DNA of 64,000 bases from Polymyxa betae A26-41 (Eukaryota > Protista > Endomyxa: Phytomyxea), in NCBI GenBank assembly GCA_003693705.1, contig RBZT01000620.1, forward strand, positions 1-64,000. The letters run 5' to 3'. Shown here in pieces: positions 9,591 to 51,728 of this stretch. The translations under genes and the position numbers were made by a program. The notes under the pieces are model-generated. The model saw nothing but the letters and a program-made list of their open reading frames with translations, ran no database searches and was not told the DNA's origin. Every line of letters begins with the position of its first letter. The first letter of the stretch is position 1.

Positions 9591-12500
9591 ATGTCGAAAT
9601 CATCATCGATTGCCGACTTACAGATAGGACATTTATATTGGATTCCAGATACAGAACAAGGATGGATTAGGGCTAGAATACATCAAATTACTGATCATGA
9701 TCTTCATCTAAAAGTTGGTGCTGATGACACATCGCTGACTTTACCAATTGATCAATATCGATCACTAATACCAGCTGGAGCTGATTGTGGTGATCTAGCT
9801 GATGTTCAAGATCTTACACAGCTCGATCGGATCTCTATTGCATCTCTATTGGCGACATTACGGGCTCGATTCTTCACAGATCGTGTTTATACATACGCTG
9901 GTCTTACATTGGTCTCTGTAAATCCGTTCAAATCAATCCCAGAGCAGTATGGTGCGACAAGTATGGCCTCGTTTATTAAAGGTGGTGATAATATGCCACC
10001 ACATATATATGCAGTAGCACAGAGATGTCGACAGAATCTCATAGAGACACACCAACCACAATCATTAATCATCTGTGGTGATTCTGGTGCTGGTAAAACA
10101 GAGGCTGCCAAATATGCTCTGCAGTATCTGGTGCTATTATCAGCACATTGTACAGAATCTGATCAGATTAGAGAGGGTATGTCAGGGTCATTATATCGAT
10201 TTCCTGAGATGAATAATTTGTTAGCTACAAATGAGATCCAAACAAGGATTATACAATGTAATCCTGTATTAGAAGCATTCGGAAATGCAGAAACCGTTCG
10301 AAACGAAAACAGGTTGGAATATTTTCGACGGTTTCGCCGAAAATCAGTTACGACTAGGGTCTAGGGTTTTGTGCAATTGAACCTTCCCACAGTTCACGAT
10401 TCGGAAAATACCTGGAGATCAGTGTCGAGAAGCAGACCGGTGTGATACGATTGGCCAGTATGACGTACTTTATGTTGGAGACGTCAAGAATAACTGGCCA
10501 TGCTAATGGTGAACGTTGCTTTCATGCATTCTATGCGATAGTGGTGGGATTGGATCCGCAACTGCTCCAAGACCAGTTCGGTCTGCAATCGACCAAATCC
10601 ACCTATAAAATTCTACAACCAGCCAATGGTAGTTCAGGCAAGCCCTCACCCCATCGACGACGTCCATCGATTCCGTCTTTAAAGGTCTCAAGTTGAAAAT
10701 GCCACAAATTTTTTTATTTAAATTTCGAAAACAAGTGCGTCTGCGTTTGTGTCGTCTTTTTAAGATTGGAGTTTTATAAATGTGAACTTGTTGAGTCTTA
10801 TTTTTTTACTTTTTTCTCATCAATGTATATGTGCAGGTAGCAAGTGCTGCTGAAGAATGGGCAGGAATTGTGTCTTCCATGAGACAGATCGGTGTGACCG
10901 ATGACGAAATTCATGCGATCTCATCGGTTCTGGCCGCCATCCTCCACGTAGGCAATATTCGTTTCGAAACCGATGACCAGAACCATGCTCGAGTTATCGA
11001 AGATCATCATTTTGATTGGTTCATTCGCCTCACCTCATTTGGTAACGATCAATTTTAGAATCTTCGAATATTCCTGAGACGTCCTCTGTTGCTTACAGAT
11101 CGCAAACGCTGTCTTGAAGCATTTACATGCCGATATCTTGGTCAGAATCCACAACATGTAGTACAGGTACCAATTGATGTTCAAGCTGCTGAATCTGGTC
11201 GCAATGCTTTAGCTAAAGAGATGTATGGACGTCTATTTCGATGGATCGTTGCCCGCATCAATGTATCACTCCAGAATATTGCTCCCGTTCAATCTGATAC
11301 TCTCACAACTATCGGCATCCTCGATGTCTTTGTATGTTTATCATTTTGACATTTTTGTGAAATTCGATGACTGTATGAATTCGAATTTATTGCTTAAAAG
11401 TGTTCTTGGCGACTGTGAATATGTTAATTTGTCTCGTAAAACCGATTGTTTCTTAGACCTGATGACCTGTAGGGATTCGAAAAATTTGATGATCGTAACG
11501 GGTTCGAGCAGATCTGCATCAATTACTGCAATGAACGCCTTCAGGCTATGTTTATTGAATCAGTATTGAGTGTTACTGAACAACAAGCATATTCTGTTGA
11601 GGGTATTCAATGGAATGCCATTTTGTTGCCGGATTGTACACCGACGTTGACGTTAATTGAAACCATCCTCAAACTGCTTGACGACGAATGCTTAATTCCT
11701 CAAGGTTCCGCTTCCCATTTATTCACGACAATCTCACAGGTTTGGAGACATAGTCGGTTCTCTCAGTCTCGGTGAACTTAGTAGTATTCAGATATCCAGC
11801 AGTGTTTTCACCGATGATAATCGGCGCTCTCCATTACATTTCACCATCTCACATTATGCCGGTCAGGTCCAGTACGATTCGTCTGAGTTTATCACCAAGA
11901 ACCGTGACCGCATTAGCGACGATATGAATGATCTGCTTGATACAGCTACATCACTTCTGATCTATGCGGTAAATGTCTTCGATCATAATCCTTCCTGGTT
12001 TTGATCGGATATCCATCTTAGATGACATCATCAACAACACCTTTCTCAATGTCTACTGAGATGCAAGTAGATGATCCAGTATCTGCTCGTCGTTCAACCA
12101 CGAAAAAGAGCAGATTTCAAGCTGGACAGTTCCGAGGTCAAGTTCAGCATCTGATGAGCACCTTGGGTCGTACTACCCCGCATTTCATTCGCTGTATCAA
12201 ACCGAACCAGGCCCAGCGACCCGGGCTGTTCCAGTTCGGCGCCGTACTGGACCAGCTCGGCAACGCCGGCGTCCTGGAATTGGTCCGCGTCCGACAGACT
12301 GGGTTCCCTATTCGATTATCTCATGAACAGTTCCGTATTCGATATCAGTTCAACGATATCGTTGAGCCTCTGGAAGTGTTTCTCTTAAGGCAGCTCAAAG
12401 AAAATCTGTTTGCTGTTGGAAATACGCTCGTCTTCTTAAAGGATGATGGATATTCCCGTCTTGAAGCGATTCGTAATCAGGTTTTGTTGATTTGCCTTTT

Positions 12501-13913
12501 TATTCGTTTGAATTGAAACATCTTTAGGCTTTGACCGTCTCGGTAATTTCCTTACAAGCATTGCTTCAAGTAATCCGTGCAAGAATCAGATTCCGAAGAT
12601 GGCGTTCATCTCTGGCTGCAATACAATCTGCTATTGCTACATATGCCGGTGTTCGGTCACATGTCAGCAAGAATATCATTGCAGCTGCAATGCTAACGCT
12701 CGTAGCAAATCGTGCTGCTAGAAGTCTGCTTCGATCCTGGTCTCAGAAAGCAAAAGATGTCGATCTGAATAAGATCGATGGTATTGATGCACTTTATGTA
12801 ACCAGTCAAGTTGTAATGTTGACGTTTACGACGAGTGACGTCACAAGTGCCATGTTAAGGCTGATTTGTCAATTACGAGATGGAGCTCCATTCCGAATCT
12901 ACAACTTATGCCTTGGTAACATTATTTTATTGGTATTTGTTGACTTAGACATCGAGTTCAGATATCGAATACGATAAGAGTGCTCTGCTTCCTGGCGAAT
13001 TGGCTCATTTCCCATCATCAGGCCATACGCCATGTCCGTTTGCAATGCTCTGCGAATTCTGCCTATCGATCTCGGAATGGATCTCAAAACCGGATTCGAT
13101 CGCCATCGTTCACAGTAAGGGTGGTCGAGGTCGATGCAGGTAATCGAACGTTACGCGATTTGAGAGAGAATAATTTATTCATGCCTGGTTGCAGCCTAAT
13201 GATAGGCGCTTATCTATTGCATCAGCGTATCTCAGTAAGCCAAGCTGATGCTATGTCTCGTGTAGCATCGCTATGTTCCGATCAGGATCCAGATAGACAT
13301 CTTGCGCCATCTCAACGTCGCTACCTCGAATATTGTACTGTTTCAATTACGAACACATTGACTGGTTCTGATTGACGTTGACTTGATAGATCATCGTTAT
13401 GTGATCGCTAGCCCACCAACCCAGCTGAATGTGACTGTCAACTTAACCCATGCAACTCTGGATAATGTGGACTCAAGCTATATGGGTCCGGATATGGAGA
13501 TCTGGTTAATGATAGCTACTCAGCAGGTTTGTCAAGACACTGCTGGTCATGATTCTCGATTTGAATGAGCTCATGTTCAGGACGATGGGAAAATGCGGCA
13601 GAAATGGATTCGATCTGTGTCCAGGACGGCAACGTCGTGTTCGTGGAAGCTGCGGAAACCTTGCTTGCTTTCAGGAGATGTAAAAATTGAAGTCCTTTCT
13701 CGTGAGAAACGCGGCAAAGTCGCCAAAGTTCTCATGTACGTCTGTACCCATTCAGCCTTCGTCCAGCCCCGATCGGTTTTCACCAAAACGGTATTGCTGA
13801 AGGATGTTGTTGGTATTTGCCTTTTCTCATCAGCTTTTTAGGAGCTCGATAAAGTATATCGCGATGCTGATAAATTTCAATTTGTAAGGTTCTCTATCGA
13901 TTTTGAGACCTGA
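9591..13913 (+). CDS. Myosin heavy chain with N-terminal SH3-like domain, motor, IQ-like neck and C-terminal PTEN-like phosphatase + C2 tail
   Basis: P-loop GDSGAGKTE, NPVLEAFGNA, switch I NSSRFGK, switch II ILDVFGFE, HFIRCIKPN. The tail has FRIYNLC, IAIVHSKGGRGRC, PSQRRYLEY and the C2-like GDVKIE...FTKTELDK. Exons join in frame across GT-AG introns; TGA at 13911-13913. Confidence 0.9.
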
Positions 13914-14907: not shown

Positions 14908-15503
14908 CAGATTAACCATTATGCCAATAAACTGGAAGATTACAATAAAAACTCTGTGTTTTACTATATAACGCCAATATCTGAGAGGAGTTGCTCAACT
15001 GATGACTTGATAGATTTAAATAAAAACGCTTAGTGGCTTATCACAATCAGCAAGCAAGAAATGAGAAGCGAGAACAGCGTCGCGGGTCGGTTCCAGTTTC
15101 TCATCGAAATGATGAGAAAACACCGATTTGAAGGACAAAGCTGCATCCTAAGCGACGCGTTAAGTCATGTAAACTGTAAAAACGGGTAACCAGAAAGAGA
15201 ACAAATAAGAGTTAAATAATACGACCAACAATTGCAGAGAGATTCTTGACCACGCTCACATAAACCCAAGCTGGGATCATCGACGAATAGCATGAAGTGA
15301 AAACTGCAGCAGCAAGACCGGTAATGAAATTCGGAATAGGCAATCTAGGGCATCTTGAGATGGGACAATTATCTTGTGCAGTGATGTGATATAAATCAAA
15401 GCCTTCGTCTTCATTCCTGTTCTCACTGAAGAATTTACAATTCGGCATTGAAGACAGTATCAGCATTCTGAGGGAAAATCAACAAAGCATCTATTTCTGA
15501 TTG

Positions 15504-16509: not shown

Positions 16510-17098
16510 ATGTCCAATCCCGAAGCGTATGTCGTTCCCAGAAATTTCAAGCTGCTGGAGGAGCTCGAGGCCGGCGAAAAAGGTATCTCTTCCGGTAAAC
16601 ATGCTGGCTGGGTGTCATATGGGCTTGATGGTATGTCGAATAACATCTGTTTATGTCATGATTCAACATTAGATTTATAGGCGACGATATACTCCTAACA
16701 AACGTAAGACTTGCATTCGTCAGTCCAATTATTGAAGGTTTCCTTAAGTGTGACTAACAGTGGAATGCGACGATTATTGGTCCACAGAATACCAATCTCG
16801 GTGAACGTATTTATTCTTTAAAGATTATCGCTGGATCTAGATATCCCAATGAGCCTCCTACGGTGACGTTTGTCACCAAAATCAACATGTCTCACGTTGA
16901 TGGCACCGGTTTAGTATTACCGAGTTTTCCATCCATCCATAACTGGAAACCATCCAGCTCTATGGTCGATGTACTCTGTGCCTTACGGGAAGCCATGGTC
17001 TCCGCCAGGTAAACCTTCCGATCCTTGTTACTCAATCGTGACTCTAAAACAATTTATGCAGCAAATTGCCACAGCCACCAATTGATTCTACCTATTAG
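16510..17098 (+). CDS. UEV1: Ubiquitin-conjugating enzyme E2 variant (UEV1/MMS2)
   Basis: [69 protein letters not shown]; 3 introns. Confidence 0.93.
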
Positions 17099-17405
17099 AT
17101 ATGTGGACTTTTTAAATAATAAACTTCATATTGTCATTGGCAGTTAATTTTGACTTTGCATTTCAATTATAGAAGTTTGGTTGGCGCCCTTTGCAGGAAA
17201 GCTTTACGGAGGCAGCAGCCACCCGTAGTTCGGCGATTTGCTGATAGGTATCGTAACGTAAGAGAGTAGAGAGACGCTGCTGCCTGCGTTATTGTTGCAA
17301 AGAACAGTTTGTCACAGGGTCGGAGGCAGTGAACTCTGCAACTGCTCTACCTGGGAGATTTCATCCTGGATCCTGCAGATTAGAAAGTCGGCGTCATTCG
17401 TCAGC

Positions 17406-18088
17406 ATGGTGGCCTTTGTTGAGGATCTCGTATCCAAAGTAACCAACATCGAATGGACGCGCCTGAATCAGTTAAGAGCGGCGTGGGGTGTCACAATTAC
17501 CATGACGACAGCTCTAGTCATTTCGGCAATTGTATGCATCTTTATTATGCTGGTTTTCATGGTTTTAGCTCTAGACTTTCGTTCATGGCTGTCTGATCCC
17601 ATCTGAAATTTTATTTCAGGTTGCGGCTGCTGAAGTACCCACGAAAACGCTGCAGTTTTCGCTGATCTGGTATATCCTGACGGTCGTTGTTTGGGCTACA
17701 TTTTCTTTCATCGTACTACTGGTCAATGTGCCTTGGATTCAGATCGACCCGTCGATCGGCTTTGGAGCTCTAGTTGCATCATCTGCGTTTCTACTTACAG
17801 TTGAAGTTGACCATTGTGTATTCTGGGCTTCGCTCAATGGGATTGTACGTTTGCTTGTCGATCTCTTTTGTATTTGTGCATTTCTATGCACTGCTTTTTC
17901 ATTGCAAGTTCGTCTGTATGATGTCATTGAGCTTATTTTGTTTAAAGAGCTCAGTTACGAGCGTAGCAGTATTCAGTGCCCTGACAGCCACTAGCTTGCT
18001 TGTCACCCTGGTAGGTTTCCTTCAATTCAAAGATGACCTTATTGGCGATACGGTAAAATCAGTGAAGTTATTAGTATTTAAGAACTAA
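17406..18088 (+). CDS. Hypothetical four-pass membrane protein
   Basis: Three exons join in frame to give ~4 hydrophobic helices (AWGVTITMTTALVISAIV; FSLIWYILTVVVWATFSFIVLL; IGFGALVASSAFLL; VAVFSALTATSLLVTLVGF). Confidence 0.6.
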
Positions 18089-18226
18089 ACTTTTGACAGA
18101 GTACCATGGAAGCTCCAAATGTCATGGCCGTTTCCTCGCAGAAACACATTAAACCAAAAGATTATTATGGCAATCATAACGCTGAGCAAGCGTAGACTTA
18201 AAGCATCAAATACATCTAACATATGT

Positions 18227-39996: not shown

Positions 39997-41332
39997 ATGC
40001 AGGCCTGGATACATCCAACCTGGTCTCTAACCCGACGTCTGCTATCGACCTTCTCTCGGACCAAACCCCATCTTAATATCGGAACCATCGGTCACGTCGA
40101 TCATGGCAAGACTACTCTGACGGCGGCCTTGACAAAGGTCATGGCCGATGTCAATGGCGCAGGTGTGGCCAAGTCGTACGCCGATATCGACAAGGCCCCA
40201 GAAGAACGTGCACGTGGTATCACAATTAATTCGGCCCACGTTGAATATGAAACTGAGAACCGACACTACGCCCATGTCGATTGTCCAGGCCATGCTGATT
40301 ATGTCAAGAATATGATTACTGGCGCTGCACAGATGGAAGGTGGTATATTGGTGGTATCTGCACCTGATGGACCAATGCCTCAAACACGTGAACACATTCT
40401 CCTTGCTCGTCAGGTTTGTCTTTTCTAGCCACGTTTTGGGATATTTGGCCTCTCTTTGCAATGGCCCTGTAATATTTATCAAAATCGACTTTCGCTTAAG
40501 TCCTGTGTGTCAGGTCGGTATTCCGAATTTAGTTGTTTATCTGAACAAATGTGATCTGATGCAAGACGAAGAACTGTTAGAGCTGGTTGAGATGGAGATC
40601 CGTGAGCTTCTCGATTCCTATAAATATCCTGGAGATGAGGTTCCTATTGTTCGAGGATCAGCCCTCTCCGCTCTGAATGGCGATTCGTCGGCGCTGGGAA
40701 CACAATCGATTGTGAATTTAATGAAGACTGTTGACGAATACATTCCTGAACCTGTTCGAGAGAATGACAAGACCTTCATGATGCCTATTGAAGGTGTGTT
40801 CTCAATTGCTGGCCGAGGAACTGTATGTACTGGACGTATTGCCACCGGGAAGATTAAGACCGGTGACGAAGTTGAAGTTGTTGGTTTGTCGAATCAGACG
40901 ATTTCAACAACTTGTACTGGTGTGCAAATGTTCCACAAAGATATGGACTTTGGTCAATCTGGTGATAATGTTGGCATTCTGCTTCGTGGTGTCAAACGCG
41001 AAGATGTTCGTCGAGGCCAGGTTCTGTGCAAGCCAGGATCTCAGAAGGCTACGAAGAAGGTTAAAGCTGAGGTCTATGTCTTGACCAGGGAGGAAGGTGG
41101 ACGTCATACCGCCTTCGTCTCCAACTACAAACCGCAACTCTTCATTCGAACAGCAGATGTGACGGGGACCATTGAACTGCCGGAAGACACACCCATGGTG
41201 ATGCCCGGTGATAATGCTAACTTTACTATCTCGTTGCTGGAGCCGGTCGCCGTTGAGAAAGGAATGCGATTTGCCCTACGTGAGGGTGGACGAACTGTTG
41301 GAGCCGGTGTTATCACCGATATTCTCGATTAA
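39997..41332 (+). CDS. TUFM: Mitochondrial elongation factor Tu
   Basis: Transit-peptide-like N-terminus, [34 protein letters not shown]-terminal [10 protein letters not shown]; one intron ~40414-40513. Confidence 0.96.
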
Positions 41333-41426
41333 ACAATCGTCGTCGTAATATTCCTTCTCAAAGTCGCAATCACGTTGTAAATTCGACTATCTTTATTCAA
41401 TGATGATTGATAACGTACTAGTCCAT

Positions 41427-50937: not shown

Positions 50938-51728
50938 ATGCGGCTTTTGCTTTCTGTTGTTCGAGGCCGGCCTTGGGTTGCTTATGGCTTGGCTGGACCC
51001 CTAATCGCTCTGATCTTCTTCGGGAAACATGGCTTTCTTGGTGCAATTATATCATTCTGGATGTATGAAACTTTATCAGCGCCGGCTGCCGGCGAGCGTA
51101 ACCGTATCGAGAGATATTTAGGTCTGGATAGTGTTTTTTTTAAATCAAGCATATTTATGTATGTTAGGTGGTATTTCTGTCTCAATTCGCTTCAGAGTTG
51201 GAAGGCTAATGATCCATTTACATCATTGGCTTATGATGATTGTTCTACTCTTTACCATTCTTGCTGTGGAAGAATTTCTGTCGGAAATCATGACGAGGAG
51301 TCTCCTGAAAGCTTTATGTGGTGGCTGTGTTGGTGGAACGGCTCAAGGCCTGCGATACTCTGACCGATTTCTTGTAATTCGCAGACGGCAGCTGAGTCTC
51401 TCTATGGCCAGGTCTGATGATGTCATTATATTTTACGTTTGCTTAAATGTTTTCTAGAAGTGTTAGTAATGCAGAACTGGCATCTGATGTCGAAGAGCTT
51501 ATCATGGTTGATAATAATCAAGAGGACTTCATAGATATAGAGCTGTTCAGCGACGATGATGAGCCTTCGGAATCTACTGAATTCGTTAAGGATGGTGTTC
51601 AATTTCACGTTGACCTTTTTGGAGAGGCTTCTGCTGATGTCACAATTGGCCACCATAATCCCCATCCTATCCGAAGCTTTTCTCAATTGCAATCGGAACC
51701 TTCTTTAGTCGCCAAAATCGAAGGTTAA
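50938..51728 (+). CDS. Hypothetical multi-pass membrane protein with HLHHW motif and acidic tail
   Basis: Three exons give TM segments, SIRFRVGRLMIHLHHWL, GGCVGGTAQGLRYSDRF and an acidic C-terminus. The start is uncertain (an upstream exon is possible). Confidence 0.65.

What the first reader, a model, noticed from the sequence alone, without database searches (positions are those of the whole stretch)
12528..13913. Myosin motor fused to a catalytically dead PTEN phosphatase-C2 tail
Seen in sequence: after the motor and two IQ-like motifs, in-frame spliced exons read DALYVTSQVVMLTF..FRIYNLCLDIEYD..AHFPSSGHTP..EFCLSISEWISKPDSIAIVHSKGGRGRCSLMIGAYLL..PSQRRYLEY..GDVKIE..FTKTELDK. This is co-linear with PTEN (DLTYI, YKIYNLC, YPFEDHNPP, HCKAGKGRTG, PSQRRYV, C2 domain). 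The catalytic Cys of HCxxGxxR is Ser (AGT, 13114-13116) and the general-acid Asp loop FEDH is SSGH. Established: dead PTEN-like domains act as phosphoinositide-binding modules in plant class II formins, tensin and auxilin/GAK. Inference: this is a myosin that grips specific phosphoinositide membranes directly, i.e. a lipid-addressed actin motor. I do not recall this architecture among described myosin classes. It is the best candidate for an undescribed system in this window.
Basis: partly seen in the sequence, partly recalled or inferred. Interest (0 to 1): 0.88.

Follow-up and report, generated by a model that had tools for sequence, protein, structure and literature searches.

The report
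Myosin with dead PTEN-like tail
Root-parasitic protists of the clubroot family carry a conserved actin motor whose cargo end is a switched-off copy of the PTEN lipid phosphatase; I found no description of this combination, and it probably anchors the motor to membranes.

Summary
Confirmed. Window 9591-13913 reads as one 14-exon gene (1143 aa, 13 GT-AG introns): SH3-like N-terminus, myosin motor with intact ATPase motifs, 2-3 degenerate IQ motifs, and a whole PTEN phosphatase+C2 unit. The genome matches Polymyxa betae. A syntenic Plasmodiophora brassicae orthologue shares five introns and encodes motor end, IQs and PTEN start in one exon, so the fusion is not a splicing guess. A third sequence (UniParc, tail only, species unknown) forms a clade with both. 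All three have Cys124>Ser and Asp92>Gly but keep His93, Lys125, Lys/Arg128 and Arg130. The basic CBR3 loop is kept; the PIP2-binding N-motif and basic TI loop are lost. The C2 core (66% identical) is better conserved than the motor (53%). The motor falls outside classes I, II, IV and V/XI; other myosins are at most 36% identical. No myosin-PTEN fusion turned up in other lineages or in three myosin surveys. Best reading: a single-headed motor tethered to anionic or phosphoinositide membranes (0.6; binding inferred). Lipid-binding myosin tails are known; this module is new. The scan noted it only on this same DNA.

The parts
9591..13913 (+). Myosin-PTEN gene, 14 exons, 1143 aa. Introns: 10177-10224, 10313-10392, 10685-10836, 11042-11098, 11332-11472, 11740-11791, 11969-12021, 12481-12527, 12916-12961, 13140-13194, 13335-13389, 13527-13580, 13791-13841
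   Evidence: five introns shared in position and phase with P. brassicae
9633..9755 (+). N-terminal SH3-like domain
   Evidence: Pfam Myosin_N E 6.8e-5, below the cut-off
9804..12441 (+). Myosin motor: P-loop GDSGAGKTE 10077, switch I NENSSRFGK 10302, switch II DVFGFE 11323, relay, FIRCIKPN 12184, converter
   Evidence: orthologue Myosin_head 82-783, E 6.5e-181
12481..12527 (+). 47-nt phase-0 intron between converter and lever; absent in P. brassicae, where one exon runs from the motor into the PTEN domain
12552..12758 (+). Lever arm: two degenerate IQ motifs 23 aa apart plus a third very degenerate repeat; helical; no coiled-coil or SAH composition
   Evidence: helical at low confidence in the orthologue model; no Pfam IQ hit
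12774..13400 (+). PTEN-type phosphatase-fold domain (pseudophosphatase)
13009..13026 (+). WPD-loop equivalent FPSSGH; general acid Asp92 replaced by Gly, His93 kept
13111..13134 (+). P-loop HSKGGRGR; nucleophile Cys124 replaced by Ser (AGT 13114-13116); Lys125, Arg at 128 and Arg130 kept
13425..13910 (+). PTEN-type C2 domain, the best-conserved part of the protein
13521..13616 (+). Family-specific conserved C2 beta-hairpin QQDDGK.RQKWIR (spans intron 13527-13580)
13698..13727 (+). Basic CBR3-equivalent loop SREKRGKVAK

Best explanation
A plasmodiophorid-specific, probably single-headed, short-lever myosin whose cargo-binding tail is a duplicated PTEN that lost catalysis. Shown: one open frame, intact motor motifs, PTEN phosphatase+C2 fold, nucleophile and general acid lost in three orthologues, three canonical PTENs elsewhere in the genome. 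Inferred: the unit docks on anionic membranes through the basic CBR3 loop, and the Cys>Ser pocket (H93, K125, K/R128, R130 kept) holds a phosphoinositide head group without hydrolysing it. The motor then couples that membrane to actin as a tether, tension generator or short-range transporter, as class I myosins do through TH1. Lipid specificity is unknown and may differ from PTEN's.
For: Single frame. The P. brassicae orthologue is 45% identical over 1193 columns, syntenic, shares five introns, and has the motor-IQ-PTEN junction inside one exon. Third tail P0185. All three read HSK.G.GR and FP.SGH, whereas the canonical PTEN rows with a matching P-loop all read HCKAGKGR. AlphaFold model of the orthologue tail: pLDDT 90.6, TM 0.82-0.84 to PTEN crystal structures. 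Basic CBR3 in all three, C2 net charge +3 to +7. Precedent: the inactive PTEN domain of moss class II formin binds PI(3,5)P2, and a Cys>Ser MTM1 keeps lipid binding and can replace it (PMC3410418).
Against: No binding or expression data. The PIP2-binding N-terminal motif (VSxxKxR, found in 34 of 49 PTEN-family proteins scanned) is absent. The TI-loop segment has charge -1 to +1 against a median of +3 in canonical PTENs. The phosphatase-fold half (42% identical) is less conserved than the C2 core (66%). The most invariant stretch is a C2 hairpin that, by PTEN topology (own knowledge), points away from the CBR loops. C2 net charge is within the canonical range, not unusually basic. The AlphaFold alignment was built mostly from PTENs, so the fold match is not independent of the sequence match.
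Confidence: 0.6

Rival explanations
1. The PTEN unit is mainly a protein-binding cargo adaptor or an autoinhibitory module that folds back on the motor, using the conserved C2 hairpin; lipid binding is minor.
For: C2 core 66% identical against 53% for the motor and 42% for the phosphatase fold; invariant DDGK.RQKWIR hairpin; PBM and TI basic residues lost; tensin PTEN-C2 units bind proteins (own knowledge).
Against: The CBR3 loop and all P-loop basic residues are retained in three sequences. The hairpin's second strand is itself basic and could be a polybasic lipid groove as in other C2 domains (own knowledge).
Confidence: 0.22
2. The Cys>Ser, Asp>Gly pocket is a natural substrate trap: it binds a phosphoprotein or 3-phosphoinositide and shields it from, or competes with, the organism's active PTENs while the motor moves it.
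For: The changes are the residues mutated in laboratory trapping mutants, with Arg130 kept (own knowledge for C124S). Three active PTENs coexist in the genome.
Against: The TI loop has diverged and there is no direct evidence. It overlaps with the best explanation if the ligand is a lipid.
Confidence: 0.1
3. The motor and the PTEN-like part are separate neighbouring genes or alternative products, as two public P. brassicae annotations suggest (PBRA_003545/003546; XXQ36820/XXQ36819).
For: Split annotations exist. No RNA reads could be examined. P0185 covers the tail only.
Against: The split models break inside the phosphatase domain by retaining a 62-nt GT-AG intron that P. betae shares. Motor end and PTEN start lie in one P. 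brassicae exon. The P. betae junction intron is 47 nt and phase 0. A third annotation, SPQ99898, is fused.
Confidence: 0.05
4. The tail keeps some phosphatase activity (Ser or a nearby Cys as nucleophile), making a motorised lipid phosphatase.
For: Arg130 and the P-loop geometry are kept; Cys957 follows the Arg in two of three sequences.
Against: Nucleophile and general acid are both lost, and the downstream Cys is Ser in P. brassicae.
Confidence: 0.03

Closest known systems
Plant class II formins (PTEN-like domain + FH1-FH2)
   Same: Inactive PTEN phosphatase+C2 unit fused to an actin machine; binds PI(3,5)P2 and targets the cortex (PMC3410418)
   Different: Formin PTEN domains lack the catalytic Arg; here Arg is kept and Cys and Asp are lost. 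The partner is a motor, and the unit is C-terminal.
Class I myosins (TH1/PH-like tail), Myo10 (PH), oomycete FYVE myosins
   Same: Motor + IQ lever + tail that binds or is predicted to bind phosphoinositides; single-headed layout as in class I
   Different: No TH1, PH or FYVE domain; the motor lies outside the class I clade; identity only 33-36%.
PTEN / TPTE / Ci-VSP
   Same: Closest sequence and structure matches (E 5e-22; TM 0.82-0.84), closer than auxilin (E 1e-5, TM 0.71)
   Different: C124S and D92G, no PIP2-binding N-motif, diverged TI loop, own long-stemmed clade.
Auxilin/GAK and tensin PTEN-like domains
   Same: Pseudophosphatase+C2 used as a targeting or binding module (own knowledge)
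   Different: Different partner domains and different inactivating changes (own knowledge); no motor.
Choanoflagellate myosin III-like proteins with Y_phosphatase
   Same: A myosin carrying a Cys-type phosphatase-family domain (PMC3942036)
   Different: Classical tyrosine phosphatase PF00102, no C2 domain, different motor class and lineage.

Membership tests
Myosin superfamily | Motor domain with P-loop, switch I, switch II, relay, converter | tested here: met
   P-loop is GDSG(A/S)GKT in both species
Myosin superfamily | IQ lever arm | tested here: inconclusive
   23-aa spaced degenerate repeats, helical at low pLDDT; no Pfam IQ hit
Myosin superfamily | Actin-activated ATPase and movement | not testable with these tools
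   needs biochemistry
Myosin class I | Motor inside the class I clade; TH1 domain | tested here: not met
   outside the 100/99 class I clade, at best a weak sister (83/88); no TH1
Myosin class IV / XXXV | Motor inside the class IV clade; MyTH4 tail | tested here: not met
   outside the 95/96 clade; no MyTH4; the genome has a separate class IV gene (L019)
Myosin classes II, V/XI, oomycete FYVE/ANK | Motor clade and tail | tested here: not met
Rhizarian classes XXXVI/XXXVII (PMC5455982) and Kollmar orphans | Motor clade with named references; domain architecture | tested here: inconclusive
   No labelled references available. The exhaustive search with the N-terminal 240 aa shows only the P. brassicae orthologue standing out. 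Figures with domain keys are not held.
Active PTEN phosphatases | HCxxGxxR nucleophile Cys | tested here: not met
   Ser in all three
Active PTEN phosphatases | WPD-loop Asp92 | tested here: not met
   Gly in all three
Active PTEN phosphatases | N-terminal PIP2-binding motif | tested here: not met
PTEN-like unit (phosphatase fold + C2) | Tandem DSP fold and PTEN_C2 | tested here: met
PTEN-like unit (phosphatase fold + C2) | Basic CBR3 membrane loop | tested here: met
Phosphoinositide-binding pseudophosphatase modules | Measured lipid binding | not testable with these tools
   needs a liposome assay

The most novel reading that the evidence does not exclude
An unnamed plasmodiophorid myosin class whose tail is a natural substrate-trap PTEN (Cys>Ser, Asp>Gly, Arg kept) that reads a specific phosphoinositide and drives a parasite-specific membrane process, such as intracellular phagotrophy, plasmodial cleavage or host penetration; an independent recruitment of dead PTEN to the actin cytoskeleton, alongside formins and tensin.
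Probability: 0.4. Interest if true: 0.72.

Novelty: new variant of a known kind. Interest (0 to 1): 0.56.

Why it matters
It adds a PTEN pseudophosphatase-C2 unit to the list of myosin cargo domains and defines a candidate new class shared by crop parasites (clubroot, and the rhizomania vector). It is a natural, conserved version of the C124S/D92 trapping mutant, so it tests directly what a PTEN fold binds once catalysis is removed. Public P. brassicae models split or over-fuse the gene, which explains why it was easy to miss. Caution: myosin surveys expect well over a hundred further lineage-specific types (PMC5583752), so a new tail alone is moderately, not extremely, surprising.

Tried and rejected
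It did not call the stretch human-like and said to go on with other tools. The joined spliced protein was never sent to a search tool: searches were exon by exon or used the P. brassicae orthologue P0152. The joined model existed only inside scripts, for frame checks, local alignments against fetched proteins, and trees. Two metagenome scans for further orthologues found nothing. The length-matched search with the tail region found only long insect PTENs and no other myosin fusion (word-index search, and it missed even P0152 because its cluster representative is a fragment, so this is weak evidence of absence). Atlas feature searches were uninformative. A full-length alignment misplaced the PTEN rows, so no full-length model was made. 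P. brassicae copies were identical, so no polymorphism-based selection test was possible. An extra intron near 13617-13674 was rejected: the frame is open and aligns without it. A 28-nt alternative for intron 6 also keeps the frame but is less plausible. The 1506-aa length of SPQ99898 is probably over-fusion; the natural stop gives 1251 aa. No PTEN-like sequence lies beside the nine other P. betae myosin loci within the fetched 8-9 kb. The origin of P0185 could not be traced.

Full report
Source. The assembly has 27,085,814 bases in 1001 contigs. Polymyxa betae is published as 1,001 contigs and 27,085,946 bp (PMC6328671). With the Plasmodiophora brassicae orthologue and synteny described below, I take the window to be P. 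betae (Phytomyxea, Rhizaria). This is an inference from matching numbers and relatives.

Observation. Thirteen GT-AG introns of 46-152 nt join 14 exons from ATG 9591 to TGA 13911-13913 into a 1143-aa frame with no internal stop. Seven of the eight motor exons (all that were scanned) hit Myosin_head, and exon 1 also hits Myosin_N weakly. The P-loop, switch I, switch II, relay and RCIKPN motifs are intact. The tail exons are short, but 12964-13137 has human PTEN as its best PDB match and 13581-13790 passes the PTEN_C2 cut-off. The catalytic Cys position is Ser950 (AGT 13114-13116) and the Asp92 position is Gly919.

Is it one gene? Comparative evidence fills most of the gap. The exhaustive search with the N-terminal 240 aa gave one outstanding hit, P0001, whose cluster is P. 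brassicae. Its locus shows motor, DSPc and PTEN_C2 frames in tandem. Neighbouring genes, including a ubiquitin-conjugating enzyme and a GTP_EFTU-family elongation factor, are shared with this window. The orthologue aligns at 45% over 1193 columns and has six introns, five of them at the same position and phase as here. The other eight P. betae introns have no counterpart there (seven map into continuous P. brassicae exon, one lies in an unaligned loop), which supports my splice model. P. brassicae exon L007:10402-11100 encodes residues 714-946, from inside the motor (Pfam end 783) through the IQs into the PTEN domain, with no intron. Public annotation is inconsistent: CEP03938/XXQ36820 retain the intron after IYNLCL and split the gene, while SPQ99898 is fused but runs on to 1506 aa; the natural stop gives 1251 aa. 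A third protein, UniParc UPI0006B2D76C (P0185), covers the whole tail without intron gaps and without a start Met, at 44-49% identity. It may be a partial transcript from another plasmodiophorid such as Spongospora, but I could not trace it, and it does not itself show a motor.

The tail. The orthologue tail hits PTEN_C2 (E 3.8e-13) and DSPc weakly and PTEN by sequence (E 5e-22). It folds with pLDDT 90.6 onto PTEN (TM 0.82-0.84), Ci-VSP (about 0.81) and auxilin (0.71); the alignment used was PTEN-rich, so the fold match is not independent evidence. The three tails form a 100-support clade on a long stem. All read HSK(A/G)G(K/R)GR and FP(F/S)SGH, while the other rows with a matching P-loop read HCKAGKGR. 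The genome keeps three canonical PTENs (C839, C846, C462) and one divergent copy (C686), so this tail is a repurposed duplicate. Kept: H93, H123, K125, K/R128, R130 and a basic CBR3 loop between strands 5 and 6 of the C2 domain. Lost: the N-terminal PIP2-binding motif and the basic TI loop. Identity between the two species is 53% for the motor, 30% for the lever, 42% for the phosphatase fold and 66% for the C2 core, so the tail, above all C2, is strongly constrained. The most invariant stretch is a family-specific hairpin, QQDDGK.RQKWIR.

The motor and lever. Outside the orthologue, the best myosins are 31-36% identical and come from many classes; none of the top 120 carries PTEN_C2. Among 275 fetched myosins, only the P. 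brassicae models also match a PTEN profile. In two trees the pair is a 100-support clade on a stem of about 0.8. It lies weakly beside class IV-like sequences in one tree and beside class I in the other (83/88), and outside both well-supported clades. The lever has IQ-like repeats 23 aa apart (two clear here, three in P. brassicae). It is helical at low confidence and, in the orthologue, followed by a flexible linker. Its E/K/R content is low, which argues against a coiled coil or SAH; a single-headed motor is inferred.

Mechanism. Shown: architecture, loss of both catalytic residues, conservation. Inferred (0.6): the dead PTEN-C2 unit docks the motor on anionic or phosphoinositide membranes through CBR3 and the retained pocket. 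The best precedent is moss class II formin, whose inactive PTEN domain binds PI(3,5)P2 and can be replaced by a Cys>Ser MTM1 (PMC3410418); formins lost the Arg, whereas this family kept it. Rivals are a protein adaptor or autoinhibitory role for C2 (0.22), a substrate trap that competes with active PTENs (0.1), separate genes (0.05) and residual catalysis (0.03). Phytomyxids feed by phagocytosis inside host cells (PMC10953367), which offers a plausible setting, but that paper does not mention myosin or PTEN; the cellular role is a guess.

Novelty. PTEN is absent from the text and held supplements of Sebe-Pedros 2014 and Kollmar and Muhlhausen 2017, and from the main text of Krabberod 2017 (no supplement held). 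Keyword searches found no description. Limits: figure domain keys are not held, P. brassicae was in Kollmar's qualitative set and might sit unnamed among the orphans, and most subscription papers are not searched. Lipid-binding myosin tails and dead PTEN modules are each known; their union appears new. Kollmar expects about 160 further types from orphans. Verdict: a real, conserved, apparently undescribed myosin architecture; new variant of a known kind; interest 0.56.

Noticed in passing
G000:C232:7033-7799 (L021:3034-3800): Decayed partial copy (88% nucleotide identity) of window 11246-11953, part of this myosin's motor, with stops and frameshifts.
   Followed up: partly
window ~16900-18170, ~40075-41345, ~50960-51410: Neighbouring genes (ubiquitin-conjugating enzyme, GTP_EFTU-family elongation factor and others) are shared with the P. 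brassicae locus L007, though spread over about 35 kb here against about 6 kb there.
   Followed up: partly
L010 (G000:C686, about 67900-68800): Divergent PTEN-like gene with an HCITGR-type loop, no Asp in the acid loop and a long branch; possibly another altered PTEN unit.
   Followed up: no
L013-L020 (C617, C455, C535, C675, C830, C596, C663, C709): At least eight other myosin loci: two class I-like, one class IV, the rest unplaced and divergent.
   Followed up: partly
L007 / L026 (P. brassicae): Public models of the orthologue are either split (PBRA_003545/003546; XXQ36820/36819) or over-fused (SPQ99898, 1506 aa); the likely true length is 1251 aa.
   Followed up: yes
window 11130-11215: The cardiomyopathy loop is slightly longer than usual, and the TEDS-rule position by count is His in both species; the regulatory meaning is unclear.
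   Followed up: no
window 15212-15466 (-): Weak PAC1 (proteasome assembly chaperone) Pfam hit in the downstream gene.
   Followed up: no
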